Source of the DNA: Schmidtea nova
Lineage: Eukaryota
NCBI GenBank assembly: GCA_044892505.1
Contig: CM097882.1
Location: forward strand, 278,690,001 to 278,754,000
Length of the DNA: 64,000 nt
Direction: 5' to 3'
This document shows positions 1,796-24,516 of this stretch, piece after piece. The stretch's first letter is position 1, and every line of letters begins with the position of its first letter. A program made the translations under genes and the position numbers. The notes below the pieces were generated by a model, which searched no databases, was not told the origin of the DNA, and saw nothing but the letters and a program-made list of their open reading frames with translations.

Positions 1796-2065
1796 AATAA
1801 AATATTTTTAATAGTTTTTTAGTTATTTTTTCTTCTATAACATTTGAGTTAAAATTTTATTAGTATAGTTGTTGTTGTTGTTGTATTAAATAATAAACAT
1901 TTTAATTAATAATCTTTTTCAATGTACAGTAAAGCTATCGAGTTTTTGTTTTATATCATCCTAGTTAAAATTTTATTAATATAGATACATAATTTATAGT
2001 AAAGCTATTGATGACATATATGAATATTTAAAGATATGAAGAGGTAAAATAATTAATATCATATT

Positions 2066-2099
2066 TCAGACCATGTGCACATCTCAATTACCTTTTGTT

Positions 2100-2137
<38 letters not shown>

Positions 2138-3060
2138 AGGTTTGAATAAGGATTTGTAACACACACACACTCGTCTGGCAAATTGTAACACATACACCAT
2201 AATTACCTTTCGAATGATATGTATATTATAAGGTTTGGATAAGGATTTGTAACACACACACACACGTCTGGCAAATTGTAACACACACACACACTCATCT
2301 CACAATTACCTTTTGTTTGATATACATATTATATAGTTTTAAAAATTTGAACCTTGGACCCTTCAAGGGTATGACCTTTGAAGGTATGACCATTGTGTGC
2401 ACATTTCAATTACCTTTTGTTTGATATATAACTTATAAGGTTTGAAGGTTTTTGACCCTTTGAAGGTTGAGCACCCACCATAGACCTTCGAGGGTATGAC
2501 CAGCATACCTACCTCTCAATTACCTTTTGTTTGATATATATATTATAAGGTTTGAAAAAGATTGAAGGTTTTTGACCCTTCGAAGGTCAAGGACCCTCCA
2601 TACACCTTCAAGGGTATGACCAGCATACCTACTTCTCAAATACCTTTCGAATGATATATATATATATAAGGTTTGTAAAAGGTTGAAGGTTGAGCACCCT
2701 TTGAAGGTTGAGCACCCTTTGAAGGTTGAGCACCCACCATAAACCTTCGAAGGTATGACCAACATACCTACCTCTTAAATACCTTTCGAATGATATATAT
2801 ATTATAAGGTTTGAAAAAGGTTGAAGGTTTTGCACCTTTTGAAGGTTAAAGACCCTCCATAAACCTTCGAAGGTATGACCAACATACCTACCTCTTAAAT
2901 ACCTTTCGAATGATATATATATTATAAGGATTGAAAAAGGTTGAAGGTTTTGCACCCTTTGAAGGTTAAAGACCCTCTATAAACCTTCGAGGTTATGACC
3001 ATTGTATAGACCTCTCCAAGACCTTTCGAATGATACCCTTGTTTGAAGGTTTGACCTTAT
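2066..3060. repeat. Complex ~120-bp tandem repeat array (subterminal repeat of the second element)
   Basis: Repeated units CTCAATTACCTTT...ATAAGGTTTGAA...GAAGGTT with embedded ACCTTCGAAGGT palindromes (2743-2754, 2863-2874) and 19-bp subrepeats TTGAAGGTTGAGCACCC(T). Confidence 0.9.
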
Positions 3061-5689
3061 TTAACCTTTGGAAATTCAAATTTAAAATTTGAATTTGAAA
3101 TGAGTCATCGATGACGTCATAAAATTCAAATTTGAAATGAGTCATCGATGAGTCATAAAAATGATGAGTCATCGACGAGTCATAAAAATGATGAGTCATC
3201 GATGACTCATCAAAAAAAATTTTTTTCTACCCCCCGGGGGGGGTCTTTGTTTTTTTTTTCCGCCCACGCATGAGTCATAATGTCTTTGTTCCCGGCTCCA
3301 CACATCTACCTACTGTTAATGATTATTCAAAAAAATAATTAATTGAATCACAGGTTGAAAAATCAACATATTTCAGGCAGAAAAAGTGGAAACAGAAGGT
3401 TGTTAAATATATATGAAATATTATAAAATTGAAAATGCGTCCATAGAAAGAATTAATACAAATTAATTAATTATAAATTTTAATGAATCCATCAATTATT
3501 GCGAAAAACAAAAAGTTGGTTTTAATCCCTCACTAAATCATTTATATGCAAACTGTCAAACTAAGACCGATCGGGTTTCCGAGAAGAAGCCCAAAATAGA
3601 AGAACAGTGGTATAACAAAGAAAAATTTAAGTAAAAAATTACCATTTCGAGCCATCAAGAGATATCATAGTTAAGGAAATTATTTGACTTTGAAAGATAT
3701 TATTATAATAGCGGAAAACTTATAATATTTTATAGCAATAAAGATTTAATTGTTTGGTTTGTAATACTGACTCATATTAAAAAGAAAGACCGGAGTCAGA
3801 ACGTTTCTGATAACCGGCCAACTTGAATATAAACCCAACAAATCTTAGATGCTGAAAATTTATAAAATCTGCAATATTAAACAAATTAGCATCCATTATC
3901 AACCATAAACAAAAATAAAATCTCTGCCACGAGGTAATTTTATCAATACCGTGAACATCAGCTCAATCATAAAAATTCCAGTGTTTATCATCGTTTATGC
4001 AAAAGTAGCAACAACGACTTCATACATCCTACACGAAAATGAAAATGGTGACGCGCACCAATCAAATTCACTTGTGTGTGTCAACCGCTATAAATATAGA
4101 CGTTAATAAGAATGCGTTTATTTTGCTTGGAAATCGTTATCTCTTAGAAATGAACTTGACCGTATGACTTTTTTTCTATTGATAGATATCCCGTAACTTA
4201 TTAGAAAAAAATGAATTGCAAATAAGTGCCACGAGATTATAAAACCAACAGCTTAGCTTACGAGACAAATCAACAACCCTATGATGTCAGATTTTTATTC
4301 GGTTTTTCTAATTTATAAGCTCAATTTGATGTACCAAAGGAGAAGTTATTAGGGACACAAGGAATATCTATCAATTAAGGAAGAGTTAATACCAACCAAG
4401 ATATTGAAAAGAATGTTAAGCGACCACGGTTACTTGGTAATCGAATATGGGGATAGTTTATAGCTTATTACAACATAGGAGTATCAGAGTGACAAAAGTG
4501 GAATGTGATCTTAAAGAAAGAACCTCATAAAACAATATAATCGAAAATTTCTGACAGCCTATACTACATAAAGTTTATTTCAATGGGACTACTATCGAGT
4601 CAAATTCGACTCCAGATAGGTTTTGTCTTCCCTAATATAACTTGGAACTATAGATTCGATATCCAACCATAGTTAGTCACATCTCTACAGACGCATGGTT
4701 CTTCAAACTTGCCTAAACAAGTTCTACAGCAAGTCAGCTGCATAATGATTTTTTTTATTTTTCGCTGTGTTATTCTATTTTGTATTAATCCTGTTTGTCT
4801 TTTTCTTGTGTTCCATTTCTTTGGTAGATTTCCGGCTAATTGCGACTGTAATATCCTTTGATAAAATTACATAAATATTCTAACGAATTCATTATTGTAC
4901 TCTATTAGTAAATGTAATTACTAGTCAATATATTGTTTGATTGATACAAGAAGTTTGAGAGATAGATATGAACGAATTTCGAATATTAAAAGTTTTCTTC
5001 AGCCTATGGATAGTATTATCGACTCTTTGAGAGCGGATCTAGGAGAAGTCTTGAACAAGAAAGAAGTGACTCAACAACACGCGGACTTTTTGTTGCAAAG
5101 ACATCAGAAGTTGGAGCACACTTGGTTTCGGCACGAGCAAATGAATCATGCTAGGAAACAAATACGTAGCTACAAAATCATGAGCAGAGGGATATGAACA
5201 ATTAAATATTTACTATGAATTTTTTGATTTTTGATATTTTATGAGATTCAAGTATATAAAATACAATAGATAAAATAAGCTTAAATGACTTAAGGAAAAC
5301 ACGTCTAGACCAGTTTGCCGGTGTCTGAACAACCTGCAAATTTTGTAATCTGAATCCTTTATCAATACTTCATGCTCAGGGAGTTGAATGATTAGTGTAA
5401 ACCAAAGGAAATAAAAGTGATAAAATTTTACGAACTAAACGAAGATATTTTTTTTGAATGGTTTCTGGAATAAAGTTCGAATATGCTTGTAGATACAAAA
5501 TTTTCAATATGTGGTAAATTATATTCAGATCAGAGTACAATATAATAGGTGTAGTGTTTTGATTTTTTTATTAACTTTGATAATTTTAGGTGCCTGTGCG
5601 GCACAAGCACCTAAAATTATCAAGGTTAATAAAAAAATCAAAACAAAATTAGAGTGCGTACACTACACCTATTATATTTCAAATATTAT

Positions 5690-7291
5690 ATATCAAATTA
5701 CTGTAGAAGAACATTTTTTGGGTTTTGTAGAAATAGCTGATTCTACTGGAGAAGGTTTGTTTAAAAGCATAGTTGTTAAGTTAGAAGATTTAAATATAAA
5801 TTTAAAACCTACGTGGACAGGGCTATGATAATGGCTCTAACATGCGTGGTAAACACAGCGGTGTTCAAAAACGCATTTTGGATAAGAACCCTCGAGCATT
5901 TTGTGTACCATGCGTAGCTCACACGTTGAATCTAGTAGTATGTGATGCTGCTAAAGTTAATACAGAAACTATAATTTTTTTAGTGCTTCCACAAAACGGT
6001 GGGATGTTTTAAAACAATATAGCAAAATAACGCTTAAACCTTTATCGGATACACGATGGGAATCAAGAATTGATGCTCTTAGCCCAATAAAAACAATATT
6101 GGTGATTATTTAGACGCTTTACTTGCCATCCATGATAATGACAGAAATGACAACAACACAAAATCTGAAGCTAAATCTTTGGCATTGAAGCTTGACTACG
6201 AATTTGTTTGTTCGCTGATAATTTGATATGACATTTTAAGCAGGATTAATGTTGTGAGCAAGATGTTTCAATCTTCAAGTACCAACCTAAATGAATCAAC
6301 AAATAGTTTAAATAATTTAATAACTTTTTTTAAAGAATTTCGTTTAGATGAAAATTTTAATAATATACTTAAAAAAGCTACAGTTTTGGCACATGATATT
6401 GACATAGCTCCTCAATATAAAGAAAATCCATTACATAGGCGTAAAAAACGTATGTTTAACTACGAATGTCGAGATGAAAGTCTGGCAGACCCGGAAAAAA
6501 GCTATAAAATTTCATTTTTTCTTCCAATTGTTGACAGTGCAATTAACTCAATAGTCAAAAGATTTGAACTTATGAATAGTCATGCCGAAAAGTTTCAATT
6601 TCTCATAAATTTTAATGAAATTTATAATTTGGATAATGAGATACTAAGAAATAAATGTACAGATTTACATAATGTGTTGACTGATGGTGAAGATATAGAT
6701 ATAAGTTCTTCAGAATTATGTAACGAACTGTGTATATTTTAAGACACCATAACTCAACTTAATAGTTTTGATCCATTAGATATATTGCAGTATATTTATT
6801 CAAATGATTTATTTGATATATTTCCAAATATAGTTGTATCTTTGAGAATATTATTAACACTACCAGTCTCAGTAGCAGCTGGCGAAAGATCATTTTCCAG
6901 ACTTAAACTAATTAAGAATTATTTACGATTAACCATTTCTCAAGAAAGACTAGTTGGCCTGTCTTTGATTGCTATTGAAAGCGATATCTGTGACAAAATC
7001 AAAATTAATGATGTATTGGATGAATTTGCTTCCATAAAAAAGCAAGAAAAATAAAATTTTAAATGAAACATTGTGGTTTTCTAATTTATATATATATATA
7101 TATATATATATTTATAAGATTTCTGTTTATTTTTTTTATGAATTAATGTTTAATTATACAGTAAATCTTTTTAATAATAAAATTATAATACTTTACTGTG
7201 AAATTTGAGTTTTATTTATGACATAATTTCCTATAAAAAGCGCTTAACAGAAAGTTGCATCAAGGCGCCAGCACCACTAGAGCCGGGCCTG
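5690..7291 (+). mobile_element. 5'-truncated hAT (ZMYM1-like) DNA transposon with frameshifted transposase and 3' TIR
   Basis: Motifs EEHFLGF, (G)YDNGSNMRG, CVAHTLNL, LKPLSDTRWESR and the hATC dimerisation motif LPVSVAAGERSFSRLKLIKNYLR, split across frames. Terminus AGAGCCGGGCCTG at 7279-7291. Confidence 0.88.
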
Positions 7292-10200: not shown

Positions 10201-10416
10201 ACTAATAAATTTTTGATTCACATCTAGTTATTTGAGAAACGTTTTCATGATGATTTATGGAATTTTTTCGACGAATTGCGAACTAAAATTAAAATATCGC
10301 ATAATCGGTTGCACAGAGGGCATGTCGTGGGGCACAGTGGGAAAGGCGGAAAGAGCTACCAGAAGGTAGGCAGCACCAAAGGAAAGTCAGGTATTAGCCT
10401 CCCAAATCCTGAGATC

Positions 10417-11312
10417 AGTAGGTAGATGTGTGGAGCCGGGAACAAAGACATTATGACTCATGCGTGGGCGGGAAAAAAAGAACAAAGACCCCCCGGGGGG
10501 TAGAAAATTTTTTTTGATGAGTCATCGATGAGTCATAATTTTTTTTTGATGAATCATCGATGAGTCATAAATTTTTTTTCAAAATTTTTTTTCGCGCCAA
10601 ATTTTTTTTTTCAAAATTCTTTTTCGTGGCACATTTTTTTTTTCAAAAATATTTTTCGCGCCAAATTTTTTTTTCAAAATTTTTTTTAGACAATTTTTTT
10701 TTTAACACTAATTTTTTAACACAAATTTTTTAACATAAATTTTTTATTTCAAGTCAAATTTTTTAACACACAATTTTTAACACAAATTTTTTAACATAAA
10801 TTTTTTATTTCAAGTCAAATTTTGTAACACCAAATTTTTTTACAAAAAATTTTAATTTAACACAACTTTTTTATAACTAAAAATTAGAGTCGTCAAAAAT
10901 ATTTGCAACAGGTGTGCAAAATAAACAAAGACATTTTTATATGTGTGCATGTTTAATTAATTATTATTTGTCAAGTATGAAAATTTTGCACTTCAAAACC
11001 ATCACAGAAGGGGTTCTGCTTCCAGGGTTCTGATCGCAATGTTCTGCTTCCAGGGTTCTGATACTAAATGTTCTGCTACTATTGTTGTTATTTAATTATT
11101 ATTATTATCTGTCAAACTAAACAAAGACTTTGCAACATGCGTGCAAGTTAACAAAGAAATTGCAACACACGTGCAAGGACTTTGCAACACGCGTGCAACA
11201 TGAACAAAGACATTGCAATACACATGCAAACTAAACAAAGACACATGCGTGCAACACATGTGCAACATAAACAAAGACATTAAAAAGCCAAAATTTATTT
11301 ATAAATATATCG
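10417..11312 (+). repeat. Left terminal inverted repeat (at least 896 bp)
   Basis: Reverse complement of 23056-23988, with a few substitutions and small indels or homopolymer differences. Confidence 0.95.
10453..10665. promoter_or_regulatory. AP-1 (ATGASTCAT) array and double-overlapping E2F sites in the left TIR
   Basis: ATGA(C/G)TCAT at 10453, 10517, 10528 and 10560. TTTCGCGCCAAA at 10590-10601 and 10654-10665, with a degenerate copy between them. Mirrored in the right TIR (23734-23745, 23797-23808). Function is inferred. Confidence 0.6.
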
Positions 11313-11864
11313 TTGTGTACGTGTACAAAATTTAGTTTCAAAATTATTACTCGGAATATTATTCATAGGAATATTATTATTCATTGTAATATTATTCATC
11401 GGAATACTAGTATTTGTCGGAATATTATTCTTTGGAATATTTGAAATCTTCTCCAGCCGTATGGATGCCGATAACATCAGTATTATTATTAATATAAATA
11501 AACTTATATAATGTAATACAATTGCTGTTTTTTCGTTTTCAACTGTTTGATTTTGATATCTGACTTCATATTCTTTTTTAACAAAGGTTTGATTGATACA
11601 TTTTAATCGTTCGACTATTTTCATCATTATTTTGTTAATCATTTTTTCAATATCTTTATTAATCACATTATTTTTGGAAGGACATTGATTACATTGTAAT
11701 TTTATTTGATTGCATTCAATGTTTGAGTAAAGACATATATCGTTATAACTCGCGCAAGTAAGATCTTGTTTTCGAAACGGATGGGATGATTGACAATCTT
11801 CCAAAGCTTGTTCTCCTTCAGTATTGTCAACACATAATAATAAAATAACTATAATTAATTTCAT
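11295..11864 (-). CDS. 189-aa putative type I membrane glycoprotein (signal peptide, Cys-rich ectodomain, TM, Asn-rich tail)
   Basis: Hydrophobic N-terminus MKLIIVILLLCV; six clustered Cys plus one more; two NQT sequons; TM AIVLHYISLFILIIILMLSASI; IPxNN repeats. The stop codon and AATAAA lie inside the TIR. Confidence 0.75.
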   Translation of the reverse strand: MKLIIVILLLCVDNTEGEQALEDCQSSHPFRKQDLTCASYNDICLYSNIECNQIKLQCNQCPSKNNVINKDIEKMINKIMMKIVERLKCINQTFVKKEYEVRYQNQTVENEKTAIVLHYISLFILIIILMLSASIRLEKISNIPKNNIPTNTSIPMNNITMNNNIPMNNIPSNNFETKFCTRTQRYIYK

Positions 11865-11928
11865 TTTAAAAACAAAAACTAATATAAAAACTAAATTTGT
11901 TCATACTAAAATATTTATTAAAAAACAA

Positions 11929-12345
11929 TTATGCGTATCTTGCATTGTCAACTCTCCAAATCGGAGTAACAACATCTTTTTTATCAATCTTGTACCCTTG
12001 AATAATAACTGTAACGAACCAGTGTTCTTGATCCATGAAATCAATAGTTTGAAAAGCATCATGAAACCGAGTTTTTCTGTTATTGATGTACATGGTTTCT
12101 TTACATGTCAAATTAACATTGATCTTTGAAAATAATCGATTTAATGCGATAATATCTGCTTTGGAAATAATTATAGCAAGACTGTCATATAAAGATTTTG
12201 TTAACTTTACTGGAAATGATAATCGATACGGTATTTCATTAACCAAAAAATAAAGTCGGCTGTCATAGTACATCTGAACTGGTTTTACCTCTGCCTGATA
12301 GATTTTTTCATCGCTTATATCTAGATTTTCTTTTCGTGATTGCAT
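11929..12345 (-). CDS. 138-aa hypothetical protein, possibly an OB-fold single-stranded DNA-binding protein
   Basis: Clean ATG-to-stop ORF. The beta-rich C-terminus WFVTVIIQGYKIDKKDVVTPIWRV resembles viral gp2.5-like SSB tails (pattern recognition only). Confidence 0.55.
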   Translation of the reverse strand: MQSRKENLDISDEKIYQAEVKPVQMYYDSRLYFLVNEIPYRLSFPVKLTKSLYDSLAIIISKADIIALNRLFSKINVNLTCKETMYINNRKTRFHDAFQTIDFMDQEHWFVTVIIQGYKIDKKDVVTPIWRVDNARYA

Positions 12346-12806
12346 GTTGTAAATTGTGACAATATTTTATAAAATGTCTTTGTATTTATACTGATTACTG
12401 GATGTCTTTGTCCAATCATATTCATGCATTTGTTTTGCACACACTATGCACATGTATTGCAATGTCTTTGTTGTATGTGTGCATGTTTAATTAATTAATT
12501 ATTATTATTTGTTATGTATGCAGCTTTTGCACATCAAAACAATCACAGAAGAGGTTCTGATTCCAGGGTTCTGTTCGCAATGTTCGGATACTAATGTTCT
12601 TATTTATTTATTTATTTAATAATACTACTACTTTCTAAATAGTATTTAATAAAAAAAAATTTTTTTAGCTTTTATATACAGTTAATAAAAAACTACTACT
12701 ACTAAAAATATTTTAATAAAAAACTATTACTATTATTATTATTATTTTTTAAATAAAATTAATAAAAAACTATTATTGAACTAAAAAAGACAAAACAAAA
12801 ACTAAA

Positions 12807-13654
12807 ATGAATAAAAAAACTTTTATTCAACTAAAATAACAAAACTAAAATATAACATCAACAACAATAATAATAATGGCCATCTGAATGTTCCAACTCA
12901 CACAATTGATCCTGATATCGAATTGTGGCAACGAGGTGGAAGAATATTTCTCACGTGTAATGTTGTTCCGTATACAATTACATTTAATGATCTTGAGATA
13001 GCAAAACGAATGGGAAGTAATAAACTGACAATAACATGTAATCAAGAAGAATGTGAATTCAAAGTTATGCAAAACTTGGCCAGTAGCGATGAAGAAATAA
13101 TTACTTTTACTATATCGTATGATCGTGAAGAAGGACATGTATTCACATTCAAGGAGGAGTTGTATATAACGCATCTAGATGAATTACAGAAATATATTAG
13201 CGATAATTGCTCGGATATTTTTACAGTTGTCGAATTAAATAAATTGTTCAAATTCAAACTCAAAGAAAAAATCACTAAAGTCAGATTTGATAAATACTTG
13301 GTCAATACATTGGGATTAGATAAGGATACATTTACCGATAAAAATATCATTTCTGGTGTTCGTCAACCGAAAATATCTAAACTTCATCAGCAATTATTCG
13401 TGTATACAAACATTATCGAACCCATTATTGTTGGTGATTCCTTGGTTCCTTTACTAAAATCGGTATGGATTGAAAAATACGAGCCAGATGAAATTGTTCA
13501 AATAGTAATGGATAATCTAATGTATTTATCTGTTTCAACATCCTGTATAAACAATATAGAAATAAATATCCGGGATGACAGCGGAAGATTTATAAAATTT
13601 CCAAAAGATTCAAAAACTCACTTAACTCTACATTTTCGAAAAAACGATGAGTAA
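12807..13654 (+). CDS. Minor capsid protein (penton); 5' end disrupted by a 14-nt duplication
   Basis: The C-terminus LFVYTNIIEPIIVGDSLVPLL...IEINIRDDSGRFIKF...LTLHFRK is typical of Polinton pentons. The frame has no ATG of its own, but removing 12837-12850 joins ATG 12807 (MNKKTFIQLK) in frame. Confidence 0.85.
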
Positions 13655-14030
13655 TCCCGATATAGTTTCAATGTACAGTGATAGCCAAACTGGTGGCGAA
13701 TTACCGTATTTTGTCGGTAAACAGTATGGATCAGGTTGGTTAAAAACTATTGGGAGATTTGCACTTCCAATTCTTAGACGACTAGGTAATTTCGGAATGA
13801 ATACTGCCAAGGACGTTATCATGAAAGATAATAAAATATTACCGTCATTGAAAACCAATGCTTTGGCCGCAGTTAATAAAGCTATACCTGCTGTAACTCA
13901 AATGCTTCCTACAATTACAAGTATGTTTACAAAAAATAAGGAACCGGAATCTGTACCGGTAGGACCAAGACGTAAACGAAAACGTATAAACAAACGAATG
14001 AAAGGACATGGAACTATATTTGAAGAATGA
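13647..14030 (+). CDS. PZ-like small virion core protein (QxGG / QxGxG motifs, amphipathic helix, basic tail)
   Basis: SQTGGELPYFVGKQYGSGWLKTIGRFALPILRRLG and C-terminal PRRKRKRINKRMK. Lies between the penton and MCP genes with overlapping start/stop codons. Confidence 0.8.
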   Translation: MSNPDIVSMYSDSQTGGELPYFVGKQYGSGWLKTIGRFALPILRRLGNFGMNTAKDVIMKDNKILPSLKTNALAAVNKAIPAVTQMLPTITSMFTKNKEPESVPVGPRRKRKRINKRMKGHGTIFEE

Positions 14031-15248
14031 TTTGCGGTAAATCTGAATTATGTCTTTTTGATCGACCATCACCTCAAGCAGTTATTGAATATGGGGCGTT
14101 TGAAGATGTGTTTCCAATGAATTCAATTACAGATAGTAGAAATGATGTTGAATTTTACATTAATGGTTCTCAAACCGAATATTTGGATTTGAACGATACA
14201 TTATTGTCCGTTACAATCAAAGTTGTAGATAAAGATAAAAAAGCTCTAGCCGATGCGAGTGATGTAGTTCCTAATAATTACCTGTTTCATACACTTTTCA
14301 AAGATGTAATTCTCGGATTTAATAATATAAAAATCGAGGGTGGAAACAATACATATGCACACAAGGCAATAATCGAAACTATTTTAAACTATACGAATGA
14401 TGCGAAAGAAACATGTCTTACTCCAATGGGATATGGTTCAGCTGACGATCGGAAAAAAATGGATCAAGGGATCTAAACTTTTCAACATGTGTTCGTCTTT
14501 ACAACTGGATTTTATGGATCAACCTAAATACTTACTTCCCGGAGTTAATGTACATATTAGATTGAAGCGATCTGATTCTGCATTATCATTGAAATCGGTA
14601 GGTGGGAAACCTGTTATCCAAATAGTTGATGCAAAATTAATGGTAAGAAGAGTTCGATGTGATTCTTCAGTATTGGCCGGTCATCAAATTGGTTTAAATA
14701 AAAAACATGCAATTTATCCATTAAAATCAAAAGAAATCGTATCGTTTGCTATCGGTAAAGGGGCATCGTCATTTTACAAGGAGCAAATATTCGGAGATAG
14801 ACGAATGCCTAATTTCATTCTTGTGGCTTTTCAATCCGAAAATCAATATAATGGGTCTTATACTGAGTCTACATCTACATTCAAACATTTTAATGTGACT
14901 TCATTAACATTGTCGAAAAATACCGATTATCGTGAAACATATACCCAGGATTTTGAAAATGATAATTTTAGTGCATCATATATGCAAAGTCTTGTCCGAA
15001 ATCTAGGTTATTTGGATAAAAACTTGAATTGTGGTATTGGTCTAGATGAATTTAAATCTAGTTATCCATTCTTTACATTTGTTCTGGCTCCCGATTTTGA
15101 TTTGAATCAAAGCCAAATCCCTCAAAACGGAAATTTACGACTCGATATAAAGTTTGCCAAACCTATTGATGAACCGGTTCATGTAGTTATTTATGGAGTT
15201 TTTGAAAATGAAGTTCAAATTACTGCCAATCGAACGATATTAGTTTGA
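14027..15248 (+). CDS. MCP: Major capsid protein (double jelly-roll), frameshifted in an A7 run at 14453-14459
   Basis: N-terminal GKSELCLFDRP..., VEFYINGSQTEYLDLNDT; later LDFMDQPKYLLPGVNVHIRL and C-terminal GNLRLDIKFAKP. Deleting one A joins ORFs 14027..14476 and 14397..15248 (DDRKKWIKGSK). Confidence 0.92.
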
Positions 15249-15327
15249 GCAAAGTTTAAACATTACTGGTTTGAACAGAGATCAAACAGTATAAATGATC
15301 AAAGTTATTATTTTTATTATTCTTATT

Positions 15328-15705
15328 ATGGAGTAAGATTTTTAATTGATTAGTTATTTATTTTTAATTAGTTCTTTTCAGGTATTACAACAAGGTAAAA
15401 AACTATTGGGAAATCAATTTATTGGAGTATTTCCTCTGGATAAAATACCTTATTTGAAAATGAATCAAGCCATCATTGTAAATACTCAGACATCTACGTT
15501 GGGTGGTGAACATTGGATTGCAGTTTATGTGAAACCAGATCGAATACATGTATTTGATCCCTTTGGATATTATTATCCGAATTTACTTGTTCGAAAACTA
15601 CAAACTATCGGTAAACCTATTGTGTATAATAGAATTCGATATCAGCATCCTTTAACAATCACTTGTGGTCAACATTGCCTTGCATGGTTGAAATCAATGT
15701 TATAA
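15328..15705 (+). CDS. PRO: Adenain-like cysteine (maturation) protease, 112 aa; join(15328..15332,15372..15705)
   Basis: Catalytic motifs GEHWIA (His), FDPFG (Asp) and Q...TCGQHC (Cys). A 39-nt GTAAG...TTAG intron gives the N-terminus MDSFQVLQQG...FIGVFP. AATAAA at ~15718. Confidence 0.9.
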
Positions 15706-15737
15706 ACAATTTATTTTAATAAACTTTATTTGAAAAA

Positions 15738-16130
15738 ATGTCTTGTTATTTTATCGATTTTTATGGATATAATGAAATGGGTGGAACAACAATTAAGGAA
15801 TTATGTATTATGAATGTCAATAATATTTTCACACCCCAGTATTATATATACAGTGATTTATCTTTATGGCCTGATCGTATAGAATCGTTTGAAGGACAAG
15901 ATTATTTTTGCCCAAAATGTATAATGGATGATATCACAGATAAAGGAGCTATTTTCTATGTAACAGATAATGAAAAGATGTATGTTTTGAAGAAGTATTT
16001 CCCCAAATTAAGATTAATTAAATATAATTTTAAAGAAGTTGAATATGTTCCTGAAAACATTTCATGTCCCTATAAAGATCATTGTATGTGTGCCTATAAA
16101 GGGTGCTTGTCTGCTGTTGTTGATTATTGA
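15738..16130 (+). CDS. 130-aa protein, probable degenerate DEDD/DnaQ-like nuclease-fold with Cys/His-rich C-terminus
   Basis: IDFYG...IKELCI, IFYVTDNEKMYVL and SCPYKDHCMCA resemble a family I recall from animal Polintons (not database-checked). AATAAA follows at 16135. Confidence 0.55.
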   Translation: MSCYFIDFYGYNEMGGTTIKELCIMNVNNIFTPQYYIYSDLSLWPDRIESFEGQDYFCPKCIMDDITDKGAIFYVTDNEKMYVLKKYFPKLRLIKYNFKEVEYVPENISCPYKDHCMCAYKGCLSAVVDY

Positions 16131-16289
16131 AAGCAATAAATATATTTTATTATTTTTATTAATTATTATTTTTATTATTATTATAAATATTATTATTTTC
16201 ATCACAAAGGCATGACCAGTGCGTGATCAATGCGTGATAAGCACATGATAAAACATGTCATGTCATGTCTTTGTCACGATACAAAGCAA

Positions 16290-16410
16290 TATCGTGACGT
16301 CAAACACACATAAACAAAGGTATATTATGTGTGCAGTATGTGTGCATGTATTTGCCTATCCTATCTCGATTCTGATTGGTCGGTTAATAAAATTCACCTT
16401 TATATAGTAT
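16290..16410 (+). promoter_or_regulatory. Putative Pol II promoter of the polymerase-side unit (CRE, inverted CCAAT, TATA)
   Basis: TGACGTCA at 16295-16302, ATTGG at 16375-16379, TATATA at 16401-16406; ATG at 16486. Confidence 0.55.
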
Positions 16411-16485
16411 ATACTTGAATTATTTCGTCACTTTTTACTCACAAAATTTTTAATCAATTTTTAAAACTATTTGCAAGAAACAACT

Positions 16486-16911
16486 ATGAACAATTTAAAT
16501 TTAAATATGAAACCACGGATCGCTGGAGGCCAGAATGGTAAGAATCTTATTATTTTATTTTATTTACATTGTTTATGTTTTCAGTTGTTAATTTATCCAA
16601 CAATATAGCCGGACAATCGAGAAATGGACTCGGAAAACCAAATAGAATTATTGGTATAATTATTATTTTATTTATTATTATTATTATTATTAAAATTTTT
16701 AGAGAATAATAATATGAATAATGTTGATATCGATGCCTCGATTGATGTCCCGAATATGATGATGATGACGAATGATGTCCCGAGTAATGATGCCATGAAT
16801 TTCAATCGACAGAGTTTAAAAAACTCAAAATGTAATTTATTATTTTTATTTATTTATATAATAATAATAATAATATTTTTATTATTTTTAATTAAATCTT
16901 TTAATATTTAA
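16486..16911 (+). CDS. Three-exon Asn-rich small ORF (109 aa), or the 5' exons of pPolB; join(16486..16537,16585..16653,16703..16911)
   Basis: Two phase-1 introns (47 nt GTAAG...TTTCAG; 49 nt GTATAA...TTTAG) give an open frame MNNLNLNMKPRIAGGQNVV... that runs into track ORF 16714..16911. Confidence 0.65.
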
Positions 16912-17686
16912 TATAATAATAACTTTTAAAAATGATTAAATTACTATGATAAAATACAGAATTTGTTATTATGATATAATGAAAAGAATTATTATGACGA
17001 TGAATAATGATGATGAACAATAATATGAAATGATGAAATGCAGAATTTGTTATAATGAAGAAAAATTTGAAGAAATAATGATGAACAATAATATGAAATG
17101 CAGAATTTGTTATAATGAAATAAAGCAGATGAATTATTATGACGAAGAATAATATGAAGAAGAAGAAATAATGATCAACAATAATATGAAATGATGAAAT
17201 AATGACGAATTTATTTTTTTATTTATGAATAATTATTTTATATTAATTTTATATTTAATTTTTTTTTTATATTGAATTTTTTATATTGAATTTTTTATAT
17301 TGATTTTATATTAATTTACCTTTTAACTTATTAAGTAATTTTTTTTTAAATATGTTACTTAATATGTGAAAAGATAAATTACCAAGATGAACAAGACTAA
17401 TTTAGATGTTATATAATGACTATGATAATTTTTTTTAAATAACTAAAAAGAAGGCTAATATGACGAAAACTTTTATATTACTATGGAATTATTTTATATT
17501 AATTTATCTTTAACACATTAAGTAATATATTTAAACCAATTACTTAATATTTTAAAGATAAATTAATATATTAATAAGATGAATATTATTTTTTTAACAA
17601 TTTATAATTATTTTTTAACAATTTATAATTATTATTATTTAACCATTTCATTTAAATTATATTTTAATTTTTTATTTAAAATTCAG

Positions 17687-20600
17687 GTTTAACATATATC
17701 AATTTTTGTAATAGTCGTTTCCATAATGACTGTCATGTCATTATGGAAAAGTACTATACCTATAAATATAATGGTGTCACCCACCTCCTCTGCCCAACAT
17801 GTAAAATTATTTCTACAACCTCTTATAAAGAATTTTTTCTTTCGCATAGGAGTCACCTTTCCCAATTCATGCCTTCGAAAAAATGTCTTTTTAATAGCAT
17901 ATATGCTAATTATATCACTAATATTAACAACAATCTTAATATTTATAATACAATTAATCAAAATACTCTAAATAATAATCTACAAAATAATAATCTACAA
18001 AATAATAATCTACAAAATAATAATACAAATAATCAAAATACTCTAAATAATCTACAAAATAATAATACAAATAATCAAAATACTCTAAATAATATACAAA
18101 ATAATATTAATAATAATAATAATACAAATAATCAAAATAATATACAAAATAATAATAATAAAATAAATACATCTAATATAAATAAAAGAAAAAATACAAC
18201 ATTAACGGATTCAGTTCCTAAAAAACTGATCATAATCGACATCAGCGATGATGAAGATGAAAATAATATTTCTAATAATAATAATAATAATAATAATAAT
18301 ATTTCTAATAATAATAATAATAATAATATTATATCCCTCATCAGTGATGATGAGGATGATCTTATTTATAATAAAAGTAGTAATATCGCTATTATATCTG
18401 CCGATGACATAATCGTCAATGATGATGAATTTGACGATTATGTTAATATTATAAATAATAATAATAATAATCAAATTGGAATGGGTATTGTTGAAGTTAC
18501 TTCAGACTTGAACGATACCCATTTTATTATAAAAATGGACGTATCTAATTTATTATTAAAAACGGTCTCTGTGCCGGATATATTGATAGATAAATTAAAA
18601 TCTTATATAATTAATTTAAAATCAGTAAAAATTCAATTTTGTCTCAAGGTAGAATTTGAGAAAGATGATCAATTACAATCTTTCGTCATCTCAAATTCTG
18701 CCAGAGAGTGGAGTGATACCTTTATTGAGGAAGGTGTCACTAGTTTAAATGAGAAGATTGTCCAGATTAACGAAAAGGGGAGTAATTGGACAATCTCCAA
18801 AATAGAATATATTAGTTTTTTAGTGACTAAATTTTCTGAAATTAGTCGATTGAGCGGCAGCAGTTATATCGAAACGCCGAATACTTTAAAAAATTTAAGT
18901 TGTTTAGTTAATGTTCAAAATAACGACACCTATTGCTTTCTTTACAGTTTCTTGGCAGTAGTTAAATATAATAGTATTGAACGCCAATACAGGCATAGGA
19001 CTACTTCTTATGATCTTTCCCAACTTGTTTTTGACCCCAACGACATGCCCATGAAATTAGTAAATATTAAGAAATTTGAGAGACAAAACAGTGGCTATAG
19101 TATTAATGTCCTTACATATGACGAAAAGGCCCAAATTGATGTAAGCGACAATGACAATGATGATAATGTCGTCCTTAAACACCCCTTTATCGATATAGTC
19201 TACCGTAGTAAAGTAGTCGGGGCTATTCCCATAAATTTACTTCTTTTGGAGAAAAAAGAAAATTTTCATTATCTTGCGATTACCGACCTGAATCGCTTTT
19301 TGAATTGTAGAAATAGTGCCATCACCCCAGTTAGGATTTGCAGTCAATGGTGCCCTCGTTGCTTGAATGGGTTTAGGAACGACGAAGCCTTTAATCGTCA
19401 TAAGGGTCTTTGTAACAAAAATCAATTGGGTACCACACTGTACACATTACCAAAAAATAAATTTTTAGAGTTTACTGATTGGAAGAAAACAGTAACTCCT
19501 CCTTTCGTAATATATGCGGATTTCGAGGCAATATTACCGAAAGACGCTGTTCACCATCAAAAACATCTTCCTATTGCTGCAGGTCTCCTTCTTATTAACA
19601 ACTTTACTGGGGTGAGAATATACAAATCTTTTGTAGGGCTAGACTGTGTTGATCAATTCCTAAGAGAAATTGAGTCAATCAGTCGGTATATAGTAACACC
19701 TTATTATTATAAAAATTATCAAAAACGCATGACGATCACTGCGACCCAACAGCGACAATTTGATAATAGCACTAATTGCTATTTATGTAAAAAGCTTTTA
19801 GTTGCACCTGTTAGGGATCACGACCATTTCACCGGTCTTTATATTGGAGCAGCCTGCTCAGAGTGTAACAAGTCCCGACAAATACGCCACTCTTTGCCTG
19901 TAATTTTTCACAACTTGAAGGGTTACGATTTACACCATATCTTAAAATATGGCCTTTCCAAATACAACACTTGGAATATCAGTTGTATTCCCTTGACAAG
20001 CGAAAAGTTTTTAAGTCTTTTCGCGTACATCGATAGTCTCACTGTTAAATTTATTGACTCCTACCAATTTGTTAGTGAGTCTTTAAGTAACGCGGTAAAA
20101 ACCCTTACATCTTTACCATTAACACACTCTGAATTTCGCGGCACTATAGTCACTGCCAAGGGCATTTTTCCTTACGACGCTGCCACTTCTTTAGAGGTTT
20201 TAAAATCTACCTTGTGTTTACCCCCCAAATGGAAAGATATAACTGCTGTCGAGTATGCTGCTGCCCATAAAATCTGGCAAGAAACATCATGTACATCACT
20301 GTACGATTACATGATGGTTTATTTAAAATTGGACGTTTTTTTATTAGCCGATTATTTCCAACAATTTCGGGTAAAATCAATTAACCATAACAGGCTTGAG
20401 CCTTTAAATTTTCTCGGAATTCCCGGCATGTCGTGGAGTTCCGCTTTATTTACTATTGACTCTCCTATCGAGCTCCTCACCGATATTGAGATGTATAACT
20501 TTTTCGAGGGCGGTATTCGCAGCGGACTAACGTTTGTCAATAAACATTATGTCAAGACGAGCCCGGATACCGCATTACTATATATTGACATAAATAATTT

Positions 20601-21964
20601 ATATGGGTGGGCCTTAAGCCAACCCCTGCCATGTGGTAATTTTGAGTGGGTCACTGATGACCAATTATTAAATAACATCGTTTGTGAGTGCACATCGGAA
20701 AATCTCGATACACTTCATTATGGTTACACCATAGAAGTGGATTTGGAAATTCCGGCATCGATTCACGACAAACTGGATGATCTTCCAGTTGCCGCTGAAA
20801 AGATGTGTGCACCGGGATCCAAGGTTGAGAAGCTGTTGCTAACGCATCTTCCAAAGAAGAATTATGTTCTTCATTGGCGGCTTCTGCAACTATTTATTAA
20901 AATTGGTGTGAAGGTAACGCACATACATCGCGCAATTAAATTTTCGCAAAATAAAATATTTTATAATTACATTAAAATAAACACAGAATTACGAGCTGCA
21001 TCTACAAATAAGCTCGACAAAAATTTCTACAAACTTTTAAATAAGTCTCTACGGCAAAACCGTAGAGAACTTAAAAAAAAGAATTAATTCACGACTGTGT
21101 AACTCGGCACAAAAACTGCTGACTTACACGTCAAAAGCTAATTTTAAAAAAACTAATAAAATCGACAATGACCTCATCTCCGTATTGCTTCAGAAGGAAT
21201 CAGTATGTTTGGATAGACCCAGCTACATTGGACAAACCGTACTGGATTTATCCAAACTTCGTATGTACCAGCTGCAGTATGAAGAGTTACAAAAATATCG
21301 TAACGACTTCAACTGTGAAATTAACATCGTTGCTGGGGATACTGATTCCTTCTTCTTGGAAATCAAAAATCTGCCTTTAAATACTCTTTTGACCGCAATG
21401 ATTGACGATAGGCTTTTGGATACCTCTAATTACGACACTCATCATGCATTGTATAGTAGGACCCTTGATTCTGTGATTGGTAAATTTAAGGATGAGAATA
21501 AGGGTCTACTGTATGATGAGTGGGTTTTCTTAAGACCTAAGTGCTATAGTCTTATGGGAGACGAGGCCTGCATGAAAGCCAAGGGGATCTGTTTGAAAGA
21601 TGCAGGTCTCACACACCAGTCTTACCTTGACTGTTTTTTAAACGACAAAATATACAATGTCCCCCAGTTCCGCATTACTTCGAAAAACCACCAACTTTTC
21701 AGTATAAAAAGCAATAAGAGGGCCTTATCTTGTAGGGATGATAAGAGGAACTGGGTGGAAAAAAATAAAAGTTTGGCGTATGGCCACTATATGGGGGGTG
21801 ACACCAATATATTTATAGGTGATCGGGATGTCCAAGAGCAACAACTTTATCAACAACAACAACAACAACAGCTTCAACAACAACAACAACAACAACAACA
21901 ACAAGGTCCCTCAGATGACCCATATGATTTTTACGATCCCTCAGCTCGGGATTATTTTGGCTAA
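17687..21964 (+). CDS. pPolB: Protein-primed family B DNA polymerase (terminal-protein region, 3'-5' exonuclease with endonuclease-VII-like insert, polymerase); frameshifted at ~21049
   Basis: GSSYIETP...VNVQNND.YCF; ExoI YADFE; ExoII FHNLKGYD; CYLC...RDHDHFTG...CSECN; motif A YIDINNLYG; motif C GDTDS; LRPKCY; DDKR. ORFs 17743..21087 and 21185..21964 are joined by restoring 2 nt in the TC repeat at 21046-21050 (NKSLYGKTVEN). The frame is open upstream to a splice acceptor at 17686. Confidence 0.96.
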
Positions 21965-22083
21965 TGATGAAGATGAAGATGAAGATGATGACGATAACAA
22001 TGAGGAGAAAGATATAAATACCGAAAAAATAAAAATAAAAAAAAATCCAAAAAAACCCAAAAAAGATATGAGAATGCATAATC

Positions 22084-22099
22084 GGCCCTCTTCAGGGCC
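22084..22099 (+). other. Histone-mRNA-type 3' stem-loop 1 (GGCCCT-CTTC-AGGGCC, then ACAA)
   Basis: Perfect 6-bp stem and 4-nt loop matching the GGYYYU-NYUN-ARRRCC histone hairpin; 120 nt after the pPolB stop. Confidence 0.65.
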
Positions 22100-22231
22100 A
22101 CAATTTATGATCGTATAAAAAATAATAAAAAAAAAAATTTAGCTCACAGATAAAGAAAAAAAAAGATTACAGAAACCGAAAATGAAAATAATCGGAAACA
22201 GAAAGCCGAATCAGATTGTGAACGAAATAAC

Positions 22232-22247
22232 GGTCCTCTTTAGGGCC
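22232..22247 (+). other. Histone-mRNA-type 3' stem-loop 2 (GGTCCT-CTTT-AGGGCC)
   Basis: Same geometry with one U-G wobble pair; preceded by AAC. Confidence 0.6.
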
Positions 22248-22548
22248 TATACATTTTGATTGTATAATAAATTGCGCAATCAATTAAAACTATGGAATTA
22301 TTTTTTAGTTTTTTGATTAAAATTTTTCTTATTTATTTTTTTTTTATAAGTTATTTTTANNNNNNNNNNNNNNNNNNNNNNNNNNNNNNNNNNNNNNNNN
22401 NNNNNNNNNNNNNNNNNNNNNNNNNNNNNNNNNNNNNNNNNNNNNNNNNNNNNNNNNNNNNNNNNNNNNNNNNNNNNNNNNNNNNNNNNNNNNNNNNNNN
22501 NNNNNNNNNNNNNNNNNNNNNNNNNNNNNNNNNNNNNNNNNNNNNNNN

Positions 22549-22591
22549 TTATTATTATTATTATCATAAGTTATTATTATTAATATTATAA

Positions 22592-22636
<45 letters not shown>

Positions 22637-22697
22637 ATTATAAGTTATTATTATTATAAGTTAATATTATTATAAGTTATTATTATTAATATTATAA

Positions 22698-22735
<38 letters not shown>

Positions 22736-22837
22736 TATTTTTATTATAATTATTATTATTATTATTAATATTATTATAAGTTATTATTAATATTAATGTT
22801 ATTTTTATTTTTATTATAATTATTATTAATATTATTA
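22549..22837. repeat. (TTA)n-rich low-complexity repeat between two assembly gaps
   Basis: Repeated TTATTA/TAAGTTATT units visible in the sequence. Confidence 0.9.
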
Positions 22838-23055
22838 NNNNNNNNNNNNNNNNNNNNNNNNNNNNNNNNNNNNNNNNNNNNNNNNNNNNNNNNNNNNNNN
22901 NNNNNNNNNNNNNNNNNNNNNNNNNNNNNNNNNNNNNNNNNNNNNNNNNNNNNNNNNNNNNNNNNNNNNNNNNNNNNNNNNNNNNNNNNNNNNNNNNNNN
23001 NNNNNNNNNNNNNNNNNNNNNNNNNNNNNNNNNNNNNNNNNNNNNNNNNNNNNNN

Positions 23056-23988
23056 CGATATATTTATAAATAAATTTTGGCTTTTTAATGTCTTTGTTTA
23101 TGTTGCACATGTGTTGCACGCATGTGTCTTTGTTTAGTTTGTATGTGTATTGCATGTGTATTGCAATGTCTTTGTTCATGTTGCACGCGTGTTGCAAAGT
23201 CCTTGCACGTGTGTTGCAATTTCTTTGTTAACTTGCACGCATGTTGCAAAGTCTTTGTTTAGTTTGACAGATAATAATAATAATTAAATAACAACAATAG
23301 TAGCAGAACATTTAGTATCAGAACCCTGGAAGCAGAACATTGCGATCAGAACCCTGGAAGCAGAACCCCTTCTGTGATGGTTTTGAAGTGCAAAAGCTTC
23401 ATACTTGACAAATAATAATTAATTAAACATGCACACATATAAAAATGTATTTGTTTATTTTGCACACCTGTTGCAAATATTTTTGACGACTCTAATTTTT
23501 AGTTATAAAAAAGTTGTGTTAAATTAAAATTTTTTGTAAAAAAATTTGGTGTTACAAAATTTGACTTGAAATAAAAAATTTATGTTAAAAAATTTGTGTT
23601 AAAAATTGTGTGTTAAAAAATTTGACTTGAAATAAAAAATTTATGTTAAAAAATTTGTGTTAAAAAATTAGTGTTAAAAAAAAAATTGTCTAAAAAAAAT
23701 TTGTCTAAAAAAAAAAATTTTGAAAAAAAAAAGTTTGGCGCGAAAAAAATTTTTGAAAAAAAAATGTGCCACGAAAAAAAATTTTGAAAAAAAAAATTTG
23801 GCGCGAAAAAAATTTTTGAAAAAAAATTTGACTCATCGATGACTCATAAAAAAAAAAAAATTTTATGACTCATCGATGACTCATCAAAAAAAAAAATTTC
23901 TACCCCCCGGGGGGGGGTCTTTGTTCTTTTTTTCCGCCCACGCATGAGTCATAATGTCTTTGTTCCCGGCTCCACACATCTACCTACT
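23056..23988 (-). repeat. Right terminal inverted repeat (inner boundary hidden in the N gap)
   Basis: Reverse complement of 10417-11312. Confidence 0.95.
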
Positions 23989-24516
23989 GAGATCATATGG
24001 TAAAAAGTTGAGGTTCTAGAGCATATGCGAGATGATCTAAATTAGAAAAAAGGGTAGTAAATCAATCGAAATGTCGATTTTCATTTCGGGTCAAAGTGCG
24101 ACTCGATGAGATTTAATCAGAATTTACAAACAAAAATACGTCATTACATTCTTGATGATACAGACGAAACAGCCACGATCACCCGATGAATAAATTCCGA
24201 TCGCATTAGAATGCGTCGGAAATCCAAATTAAATTAAACTAGTTTCTAAAAATAGACCGATCGTCGTATATGGCGCGGTTCCTCAAGTTATCCTCCGATC
24301 GCTGTATATAGCGCGGAAATCTTTATTAAATTCTATATGTCCTGAATGCTGTACATAGCACAGGATTAATTATGAACCCCTTATCTCGACCGTGGTAGAT
24401 CGCGGCGAGACAAATCAATATAACTATATTATTAAATTAAATTCGGTCGATTTTACATGTTAGTAGTAATTCTCTTACAATTTTTTCAATAAATCTTATG
24501 GTTTACATTCAATAAA

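What the first reader, a model, noticed from the sequence alone, without database searches (positions are those of the whole stretch)
10417..10670. TIRs carry DHFR-type double E2F sites plus an AP-1 array: candidate cell-cycle-responsive origin/enhancer
Seen: TTTCGCGCCAAA twice per TIR (10590, 10654; 23734, 23797) with a degenerate TTTCGTGGCACA copy between, in ~32-bp units of otherwise poly-T DNA. There are also four ATGA(C/G)TCAT palindromes and a CCCCCGGGGG palindrome within ~150 bp of the end. Established: TTTCGCGCCAAA is the overlapping double E2F site of the DHFR promoter, adenovirus E2 (replication gene) transcription uses E2F and ATF sites, and adenovirus ITRs recruit host factors. Inference: together with the CRE/CCAAT/TATA promoter (16290-16410) and the histone-type hairpins, this points to an S-phase-coupled replication programme.
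Basis: partly seen in the sequence, partly recalled or inferred. Interest (0 to 1): 0.8.

Follow-up and report, generated by a model that had tools for sequence, protein, structure and literature searches.

The report
Factor-site arrays in Maverick ends
The ends of a defective virus-like Maverick transposon in an animal genome carry repeated look-alikes of host transcription-factor sites: the AP-1-type ones are shared with a sister element and probably matter, while the E2F-type ones are confined to this lineage and remain unproven.

Summary
TTTCGCGCCAAA occurs exactly twice per arm, with a degenerate copy between, in 32-bp poly-T units. Each arm also has four perfect ATGA(C/G)TCAT palindromes, a fifth one-mismatch site and a C/G palindrome.

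The interval is the outer quarter of a TIR of at least 0.9 kb. The TIR belongs to a 13,572-bp defective Maverick/Polinton (adintovirus-like) element at 10417-23988. It has a 6-bp duplication (GAGATC) and AGT-type ends, and sits in an unidentified AT-rich animal genome.

A third, independent end lies in the same window (3083-3314). It shares the outer ~175 bp, including all bZIP-type palindromes; it has more of them, plus one CRE-spaced variant, and its spacers are diverged. It has no E2F-like unit.

So the AP-1-type array looks constrained. The E2F-like sites trace to one duplication in a lineage-specific tandem array.

The S-phase idea has one independent hint: two histone-type hairpins just after the polymerase gene (Rfam 29.5 bits, below the curated threshold).

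No binding, expression or origin evidence exists.

The parts
10411..10416 (.). Left copy of the 6-bp target-site duplication GAGATC
10417..23988 (+). Defective Maverick/Polinton-type element, 13,572 bp, with ends 5'-AGTAGG...CCTACT-3'
   Evidence: gene homology
23989..23994 (.). Right copy of the target-site duplication GAGATC
10417..11312 (+). Left TIR. The length is a lower bound, because the partner arm runs into an N run that was not filled.
23056..23988 (-). Right TIR; abuts N run 22838-23055
10417..10571 (+). Conserved terminal module shared by three ends: end motif with GTAG-GTAG reiteration, two AACAAAGAC words (10441, 10481), solo bZIP-type palindrome (10453-10461), GC box (10462-10472), C6G6 palindrome (10489-10500), and two pairs of bZIP-type palindromes (10517-10536, 10549-10568)
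10572..10703 (+). Lineage-specific 32-bp poly-T units holding the E2F-like dodecamers (10590-10601, 10654-10665) and the degenerate copy (10622-10633)
10698..10873 (+). Array of 14-bp units (T6 followed by AACACAAA-type words), 11.5 copies; part of a strand-asymmetric T-tract zone
11120..11281 (+). Inner-TIR repeats of about 30 bp that reuse the AACAAAGAC and ATGCGTG words
23710..23826 (-). Right-arm E2F-like units (dodecamers 23734-23745, 23797-23808)
23826..23988 (-). Right-arm copy of the conserved terminal module (bZIP-type sites 23828, 23839, 23865, 23876, 23944; C/G palindrome 23903-23917)
3083..3314 (-). Third, independent end of a sister lineage: same outer ~175 bp, 7 perfect TRE-type palindromes, one CRE-spaced variant and one one-mismatch site, C/G palindrome, no E2F-like unit
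2406..3035 (.). Tandem repeats of about 120 bp that occupy, in the sister end, the place of the E2F-like units
17743..21964 (+). [quoted passage not shown]
14027..15248 (+). Homologue of a conserved ~409-aa gene of relatives (probable virion protein), broken (one frameshift)
12923..13654 (+). 5'-truncated copy of a ~330-350-aa gene that relatives carry as three tandem paralogues
15346..15705 (+). Adenain-like cysteine protease ORF (Peptidase_C5, 26.8 bits against a cut-off of 21.3)
16290..16410 (+). Internal promoter-like stretch upstream of the polymerase: CRE at 16295, inverted CCAAT, TATA; shares the ATGCGTG and ACAAAGAC-like words with the TIR
22079..22124 (+). Histone-type 3' stem-loop (hairpin 22084-22099), 120 nt after the polymerase stop
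22232..22247 (+). Second histone-type hairpin (one G-U pair)

Best explanation
The interval is the outer quarter of the TIR (at least 0.9 kb) of a defective Maverick/Polinton-type, adintovirus-like element in an animal genome.

The outermost ~175 bp form a conserved terminal module. I infer that this is the cis-acting end, recognised for integration and for protein-primed replication. It carries five bZIP-type palindromes that most likely recruit a host AP-1/ATF/CREB-type dimer, which would act as an enhancer or auxiliary end-binding factor.

Immediately inside lies a rapidly evolving, 32-bp-phased, nucleosome-unfriendly poly-T array. In this lineage it happens to carry two DHFR-type E2F dodecamers. 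They may add an E2F input but have a single evolutionary origin.

Shown: the anatomy, the kinship of the element, and the conservation pattern. Inferred: every binding and functional step.
For: - Element identity: 6-bp duplication and AGT-type ends (PMC8097293). Polymerase 53-57% identical to metagenomic proteins carrying PF03175. Peptidase_C5 hit. Collinear homologues of five further genes in relatives that also carry an rve integrase.
- Conservation: the first ~100 bp are nearly identical at three ends, and the bZIP-type 9-mers are retained at the sister end. There the copy number rises from 5 to 9 and the spacers change from T-rich to A-rich.
- One sister-end site is CRE-spaced, as expected for bZIP half-site recognition.
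- A conserved solo 9-mer lies 36 bp from the tip, which shows that the 9-mer is the unit.
- 16 of 20 TGASTCA in the window lie at the three ends.
- The internal promoter shares a CRE, ATGCGTG and ACAAAGAC-like words with the TIR.
- T runs of 6 or more: 45 per kb in the array against 4.8 per kb in the window, and strand-asymmetric.
- E2F-like units are absent from 1-3314.
Against: - No binding, expression or chromatin data.
- Only three ends from two lineages.
- The copy is defective, so its ends need not be under current selection.
- Spacing between modules differs by 1-5 bp between the two arms, which argues against strict helical phasing unless these are homopolymer read errors.
- Genes next to both TIRs read towards them, so no promoter target is adjacent.
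- Two distant relatives (about 50-57% polymerase identity) show no ATGASTCAT in the stretches held, but their true ends are mostly not in hand.
- The host is unidentified, so its factor repertoire is assumed.
Confidence: 0.45

Rival explanations
1. The dodecamers are working E2F sites that, with the AP-1 array, make the TIR a cell-cycle-responsive origin or enhancer, as part of an S-phase-coupled replication programme.
For: - Exact 12-bp identity to the DHFR E2F double site (PMC3205837, PMC2784457).
- All 8 TTTSGCGC matches in 64 kb lie here.
- The cores are identical in all four copies, while six substitutions and several indels separate the arms nearby.
- Independent S-phase hallmark: two histone-type hairpins 120 and 268 nt after the polymerase stop, against 0.01 expected; Rfam Histone3 E = 2e-4 for the whole window.
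- Adintoviruses are reported to encode candidate Rb-binding 'Oncoid' proteins upstream of PolB (PMC8502044).
Against: - Absent from the sister end.
- One evolutionary origin: a 64-bp duplication plus arm-to-arm copying.
- Not promoter-proximal to any gene, and none in the polymerase promoter region.
- The Histone3 score of 29.5 is below Rfam's gathering score of 34.
- The single LxCxE found in an element ORF is not conserved in its homologue.
- Post-hoc motif picking: the same 100 bp also resemble GC-box, HMG-box and E-box sites.
Confidence: 0.15
2. The repeated words are binding sites for the element's own proteins (integrase, the terminal-protein part of the polymerase, packaging proteins). 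This would be as in the subterminal repeats of TIR transposons or the packaging repeats of linear dsDNA viruses. On this reading the likeness to host factor sites is incidental.
For: - AACAAAGAC: all 16 exact copies in the window lie in the element or the sister end. All but the internal one at 12464 lie in the termini and point inward. They are present at the tip and again in inner-TIR arrays.
- Each lineage has its own subterminal tandem array.
- The polymerase has zinc-finger-like and Endonuclease VII-like segments.
Against: - Perfect ATGASTCAT, with a CRE-spaced variant, is the textbook bZIP target (PMC8805717).
- No bZIP domain is recorded among the gene products of the two relatives.
- The same bZIP-type word class recurs in an ordinary-looking pol II promoter inside the element.
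Confidence: 0.2
3. No function. The motifs are by-products of satellite-like tandem duplication in a repeat-prone TIR of a dead copy, and their likeness to known sites is chance plus post-hoc selection.
For: - The outer 260 bp hold 6 of the 9 substitutions and most indels between the arms.
- Arrays differ completely between lineages beyond ~175 bp.
- The element lacks integrase and ATPase genes and has two frameshifted genes.
- Many different factor-like words can be read in the same DNA.
Against: The 9-mers are maintained at an independent end while spacers diverged and copy number changed. The first ~100 bp are almost invariant among the three ends. This reading fits the E2F-like units better than the AP-1-type array.
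Confidence: 0.2

Closest known systems
Maverick/Polinton elements and adintoviruses (PMC8097293, PMC8502044)
   Same: Protein-primed PolB, adenain-like protease, long TIRs, perfect 6-bp duplication, AGT-type end motif. Relatives carry an rve integrase, an A32-like ATPase, and Bcl-2 and TBP homologues.
   Different: This copy lacks the integrase, ATPase and accessory genes and has two frameshifted genes. Its polymerase lies downstream of the virion-gene block and faces the right end, an order not seen in the two relatives. Arrays of host-factor-like sites in the ends have not, to my knowledge, been described for this group; the two papers consulted do not mention them.
Adenovirus inverted terminal repeats and E2 early promoter logic (established knowledge; no sequence was fetched or used)
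   Same: Identical inverted ends of a protein-primed linear replicon. Host factor sites next to the core end. E2F plus ATF-type sites are associated with the replication genes.
   Different: Here the E2F-like sites are in the TIR, not in the promoter of the polymerase gene. The factors differ. Nothing is known about binding.
DHFR-type overlapping inverted E2F site (PMC3205837, PMC2784457)
   Same: The 12 letters are identical.
   Different: In DHFR the site sits at the transcription start. Here no start is known nearby, and the flanks are homopolymer T and A runs that supply half of the motif for free.
AP-1 sites in enhancer-origin regions of small DNA tumour viruses (established knowledge)
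   Same: Clustered TRE-type sites beside a replication start, on a virus-like genome that depends on host factors.
   Different: Those origins are initiator-helicase driven and circular. This one would be protein-primed and terminal.
Subterminal repeat arrays of TIR transposons such as Ac/Ds and En/Spm (established knowledge)
   Same: Short words repeated in fixed orientation inside the TIR, with lineage-specific turnover.
   Different: Those arrays bind the element's transposase. Here the best-conserved word is a canonical host bZIP target.
Replication-dependent histone mRNA 3' stem-loop (Rfam RF00032)
   Same: 6-bp GC-rich stem, 4-nt pyrimidine loop and ACA after the stem; full-length model match.
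   Different: Below the curated threshold. It follows a polymerase gene, not a histone gene. It is present twice in tandem, and an AATAAA follows the first hairpin.

Membership tests
Maverick/Polinton (adintovirus-like) element | [quoted passage not shown] | tested here: met
   Exo and Pol motifs are visible in the translation. The protein is 53-57% identical over residues 400-1100 to proteins with PF03175. The window ORF itself gave no PF03175 hit at E <= 0.01 and no PDB hit.
Maverick/Polinton (adintovirus-like) element | Retrovirus-type (rve) integrase gene | tested here: not met
   No rve hit in the element's ORFs. The integrases of L001 and L002 find nothing in the window. Relatives have the gene. 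I therefore file this copy as a defective derivative, not as an autonomous member.
Maverick/Polinton (adintovirus-like) element | Adenain-like cysteine protease | tested here: met
   Peptidase_C5 at 26.8 bits, cut-off 21.3. Weak adenain matches in the PDB, E = 0.03.
Maverick/Polinton (adintovirus-like) element | A32/FtsK-type packaging ATPase | tested here: not met
   The relatives' ATPase-like genes find nothing in the window.
Maverick/Polinton (adintovirus-like) element | Jelly-roll capsid genes | tested here: inconclusive
   Homologues of the conserved ~409-aa and ~330-aa genes are present, but there are no family or PDB sequence hits. No fold was predicted.
Maverick/Polinton (adintovirus-like) element | Long TIRs, 6-bp target duplication, AG(T)-type ends | tested here: met
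   end-motif types and 6-bp duplications as in PMC8097293
E2F-regulated (DHFR-type) control region | Overlapping inverted TTTSGCGC sites | tested here: met
   The consensus is from my own knowledge and occurs in the literature.
E2F-regulated (DHFR-type) control region | Position close to a transcription start | tested here: inconclusive
   No inward-reading gene starts within about 2 kb, and the neighbouring genes read towards the TIRs. No transcript data.
E2F-regulated (DHFR-type) control region | Conservation of the CGCG cores among related copies | tested here: not met
   Absent from the one independent related end.
E2F-regulated (DHFR-type) control region | E2F/DP binding and cell-cycle-dependent output | not testable with these tools
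   No occupancy or expression data available.
bZIP (AP-1/CRE) site array | Clustered palindromic TGASTCA cores with matching flanks | tested here: met
   15 ATGASTCAT against 0.67 expected; pairs at 11-bp spacing.
bZIP (AP-1/CRE) site array | Sites conserved among related copies while spacers diverge | tested here: met
   (three ends, two lineages only)
bZIP (AP-1/CRE) site array | Binding by a bZIP dimer | not testable with these tools
   -
Protein-primed terminal origin of the adenovirus/phi29 type | Identical inverted ends with a short terminal reiteration that would allow sliding back | tested here: met
   GTAG occurs twice in tandem at positions 2-9 of both ends. Its use in priming is an inference.
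Protein-primed terminal origin of the adenovirus/phi29 type | Terminal protein linked to the 5' ends; origin activity | not testable with these tools
   -
Replication-dependent histone-type mRNA 3' end | Stem-loop matching RF00032 at the curated score | tested here: inconclusive
   29.5 bits against a gathering score of 34, with E = 2e-4 for the window. The second hairpin was found by pattern only.

The most novel reading that the evidence does not exclude
A Maverick lineage has tied its replication module to the host's S phase with two borrowed host signals: DHFR-type E2F double sites in its terminal repeats, and histone-type 3' hairpins on its polymerase transcript. A family-wide bZIP site array serves as a general enhancer of the ends.
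Probability: 0.12. Interest if true: 0.75.

Novelty: new member of a known kind. Interest (0 to 1): 0.4.

Why it matters
Almost nothing is known about how Mavericks and adintovirus-like elements are switched on in animal cells. A conserved terminal module with canonical bZIP targets would give a concrete, checkable hypothesis for their control: stress- or growth-responsive activation.

If the E2F-like sites and the histone-type hairpins both prove real, the element would show a virus-like replicon borrowing two separate host S-phase signals.

If not, the case is a useful caution. Repeat-rich TIRs can be read as almost any factor site.

Tried and rejected
- **Window protein look-ups.** Exact look-ups of two window proteins found nothing on record.
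- **First polymerase search.** It was swamped by the low-complexity N-terminus. Repeating it on residues 400-1100 worked.
- **Host identification.** A search with a Tigger-like ORF failed to name the host. The best hit was 54% identical, and the named hits are almost all animals.
- **Structure and RNA family searches.** The PDB sequence search gave nothing for the polymerase or the ~409-aa homologue. Rfam at gathering scores gave nothing.
- **Rb-binding motif.** The one LxCxE in a real ORF is not conserved in its homologue, so I rejected it as chance.
- **Motif counts in L001 and L002.** They were negative. This is weak evidence, because their true ends are mostly outside the stretches held and their non-coding DNA does not align with the window.
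- **Bacterial promoter scan.** It is irrelevant here.
- **Common origin of the units.** Aligning the six 32-bp units to ask whether the E2F-like units derive from the bZIP-pair units was inconclusive.
- **Steps not done.** I did not predict folds of the virion-gene homologues. I did not fill N runs.

Full report
**Observation**

- The dodecamer TTTCGCGCCAAA is exact at 10590 and 10654. Its reverse complement is exact at 23734 and 23797. It occurs nowhere else in the window.
- A degenerate copy lies between the two at 10622.
- The units have a 32-bp period, 3.7 copies.
- ATGASTCAT occurs four times per arm. The window total is 15 against 0.67 expected. Each arm has a fifth site with one mismatch.
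- The C/G palindrome is at 10489-10500.
- The dodecamer is letter for letter the DHFR promoter E2F site used as an EMSA probe (PMC3205837) and listed in Transfac (PMC2784457).
- All eight matches to TTTSGCGC in 64 kb are these units.

The statistics need one correction. The four copies go back to a single unit that was duplicated with a 64-bp period and then copied between the arms. The independent sample is therefore one.

**What the element is**

The repeat arms end exactly at 10417 and 23988. The ends read 5'-AGTAGG...CCTACT-3' and are flanked by a perfect 6-bp duplication, GAGATC. This is the Maverick signature: 6-bp duplications and AG/AGT-type end motifs (PMC8097293).

The arms match over at least 896 bp. 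The right arm runs into an N run (22838-23055), which I did not fill, so the inner edge of the TIR is unknown.

Inside the element are:
- a protein-primed family B polymerase with visible Exo and Pol motifs, 53-57% identical to unnamed metagenomic proteins carrying PF03175 and PF02945;
- an adenain-like protease (weak PDB support);
- homologues of four further genes conserved in two relatives, namely those of about 110, 114, 159 and 409 residues;
- a 5'-truncated copy of a ~330-aa gene that relatives carry three times.

The copy is defective. The polymerase gene and the ~409-aa homologue each carry one frameshift. One gene is truncated by deletion. The integrase, packaging-ATPase, Bcl-2-like and TBP-like genes of the relatives are absent. 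I give no positions for these breaks.

The host is an unidentified AT-rich animal. Neighbouring Tigger, hAT and LTR-retrotransposon fragments have animal relatives only, at 54% identity or less. The nearest named polymerase relatives are insect proteins at about 33% identity.

**Anatomy of the end (left-arm coordinates)**

- 10417-10440: GC-rich tip (54% GC over the first 84 bp) with GTAG twice in tandem.
- 10441 and 10481: AACAAAGAC.
- 10453: a solo bZIP-type palindrome.
- 10462: a GC box.
- 10489-10500: C6G6.
- 10517-10568: two pairs of bZIP-type palindromes, 11 bp centre to centre within a pair and 32 bp between pairs.
- 10572-10703: 32-bp units with the E2F-like words.
- 10698-10873: 14-bp units, each T6 followed by an AACACAAA-type word.
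- 11011-11281: further repeats that reuse AACAAAGAC and ATGCGTG.

Between 10500 and 10880 there are 17 runs of six or more T and one A run. That is 45 per kb against 4.8 per kb in the window.

**Tests by comparison**

1. *Left arm against right arm.* There are nine substitutions and about nine indel events. Six substitutions and most indels fall in the outer 260 bp, largely as homopolymer length changes. The dodecamer cores are untouched. One bZIP-type site is hit in each arm.

It shares the terminal 34 bp exactly and the first ~100 bp almost exactly. It has both AACAAAGAC words, the GC box, the C/G palindrome and the solo palindrome.
   - Its paired array is larger: seven perfect TRE-type sites, one CRE-spaced site and one one-mismatch site. 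Its spacers are A-rich where the main element's are T-rich.
   - Beyond ~175 bp the similarity stops. In place of the E2F-like units there are ~120-bp tandem repeats.
   - No TTTSSCGC occurs anywhere in 1-3314.
   - The bZIP-type array therefore behaves like constrained sequence. The E2F-like units belong to the fast-changing subterminal zone.

3. *Two distant relatives (L001, L002).* They have no ATGASTCAT, and one TTTSGCGC inside a gene. Their ends are mostly not in hand and their non-coding DNA does not align with the window, so this says little. L002 does have a C10G10 palindrome, tandem repeats and A/T-phased repeats upstream of its polymerase gene.

**Context for the S-phase idea**

The stretch 16290-16410 does hold a CRE, an inverted CCAAT and a TATA ahead of small, apparently spliced ORFs and the polymerase gene. 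This stretch shares word types with the TIR: the bZIP/CRE class, ATGCGTG, and an ACAAAGAC-like word. That favours a transcriptional role for the TIR words.

Two histone-type hairpins lie 120 and 268 nt after the polymerase stop, on its strand. They are the only two matches to the hairpin pattern in the window, against 0.01 expected. The first is a full-length match to Rfam Histone3 at 29.5 bits, E = 2e-4 for the whole window, below the gathering score of 34. This is an independent S-phase hint and the main reason I keep the E2F reading alive.

Against the S-phase idea:
- there is no E2F-like site in the polymerase promoter region;
- the genes next to both TIRs read towards them;
- the single LxCxE in an element ORF is not conserved, although adintoviruses are reported to encode candidate Rb-binding proteins (PMC8502044).

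**Explanation**

Most likely (0.45), the outer ~175 bp are the working end of this Maverick family. On this reading the bZIP-type palindromes are real binding sites for a host AP-1/ATF/CREB-type factor. The E2F-like units are a lineage-specific addition of uncertain value inside a nucleosome-unfriendly, repeat-prone spacer.

Rivals:
- working E2F sites within an S-phase programme (0.15);
- sites for the element's own proteins (0.2), best supported for AACAAAGAC, whose 16 exact copies all lie in the element or the sister end and, in the termini, all point inward;
- no function (0.2), which fits the E2F-like units better than the bZIP-type array.

**Comparison with known systems**

The element works like, and is kin to, Mavericks and adintoviruses. 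As a copy without integrase it is a defective derivative rather than an autonomous member.

a. Before I could see what they were, I fetched two metagenome contigs by look-up. Their gene tables look like whole Maverick/adintovirus-like genomes, probably of animals. On seeing this I fetched no more relatives by look-up or pattern. I used the two loci only for counts, bounds and reading two short non-coding stretches.

b.

c. The IUPAC consensus patterns for E2F, AP-1 and CRE sites are from my own knowledge or from the finding. Two of them were then found in papers.

d. Tool tables and my scripts and notebook entry 1 show per-frame ORF or alignment bounds of the two frameshifted genes.

Noticed in passing
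window 22079-22124 and 22232-22247 (+): Two histone-type 3' hairpins directly after the polymerase gene. The first is a full-length Rfam Histone3 match at 29.5 bits (gathering score 34). An AATAAA follows it.
   Followed up: partly
window 1-3314: End of a sister Maverick lineage whose body would lie left of the window. It has ~120-bp tandem repeats (2406-3035) rich in a CCTTCGAAGG palindrome, and it shares short inner-TIR repeats with the main element (146-232, 835-1126).
   Followed up: partly
window 50714-52085 (+): Degraded fragment of another polymerase gene of the same family, 31-50% protein identity and 72-80% DNA identity in patches.
   Followed up: partly
window 16487-17700 (+): Small ORFs with short introns of the GTAAG...TTTTCAG type between the internal promoter and the polymerase gene. 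They were not joined or searched.
   Followed up: no
window 11295-11864 (-): 189-aa ORF with a signal-peptide-like start, cysteine-rich middle, one membrane-span-like stretch and a repetitive tail. Its 3' end lies inside the left TIR.
   Followed up: no
window 17743-18900 (+): The polymerase ORF begins with about 250 residues of Asn-rich low complexity and acidic runs, preceded by a zinc-finger-like segment. This swamped the first protein search.
   Followed up: no
window 42704-42806, 44559-44662, 59851-59943: Long near-perfect hairpins that hit unrelated miRNA models on both strands far below their thresholds. They are probably palindromic transposon remnants.
   Followed up: no
window 4937-7054, 30963-31944, 46786-50175: hAT-like, Tigger/pogo-like and LTR-retrotransposon fragments. 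The window is a transposon-rich region of an animal genome.
   Followed up: partly
L002 1-6315: Two diverged polymerase genes head to head, separated by 625 bp that hold five ~32-bp tandem repeats, a C10G10 palindrome, A/T-phased repeats and a TATA.
   Followed up: partly
L001 12382-13431; L002 7583-8161: Relatives encode Bcl-2-like and TATA-binding-protein-like genes. Both are absent from the window copy.
   Followed up: no
L001 1-120: ATCGAT occurs three times within 120 bp of the contig end, upstream of the polymerase gene. The same hexamer is the centre of the paired palindromes in the window.
   Followed up: no
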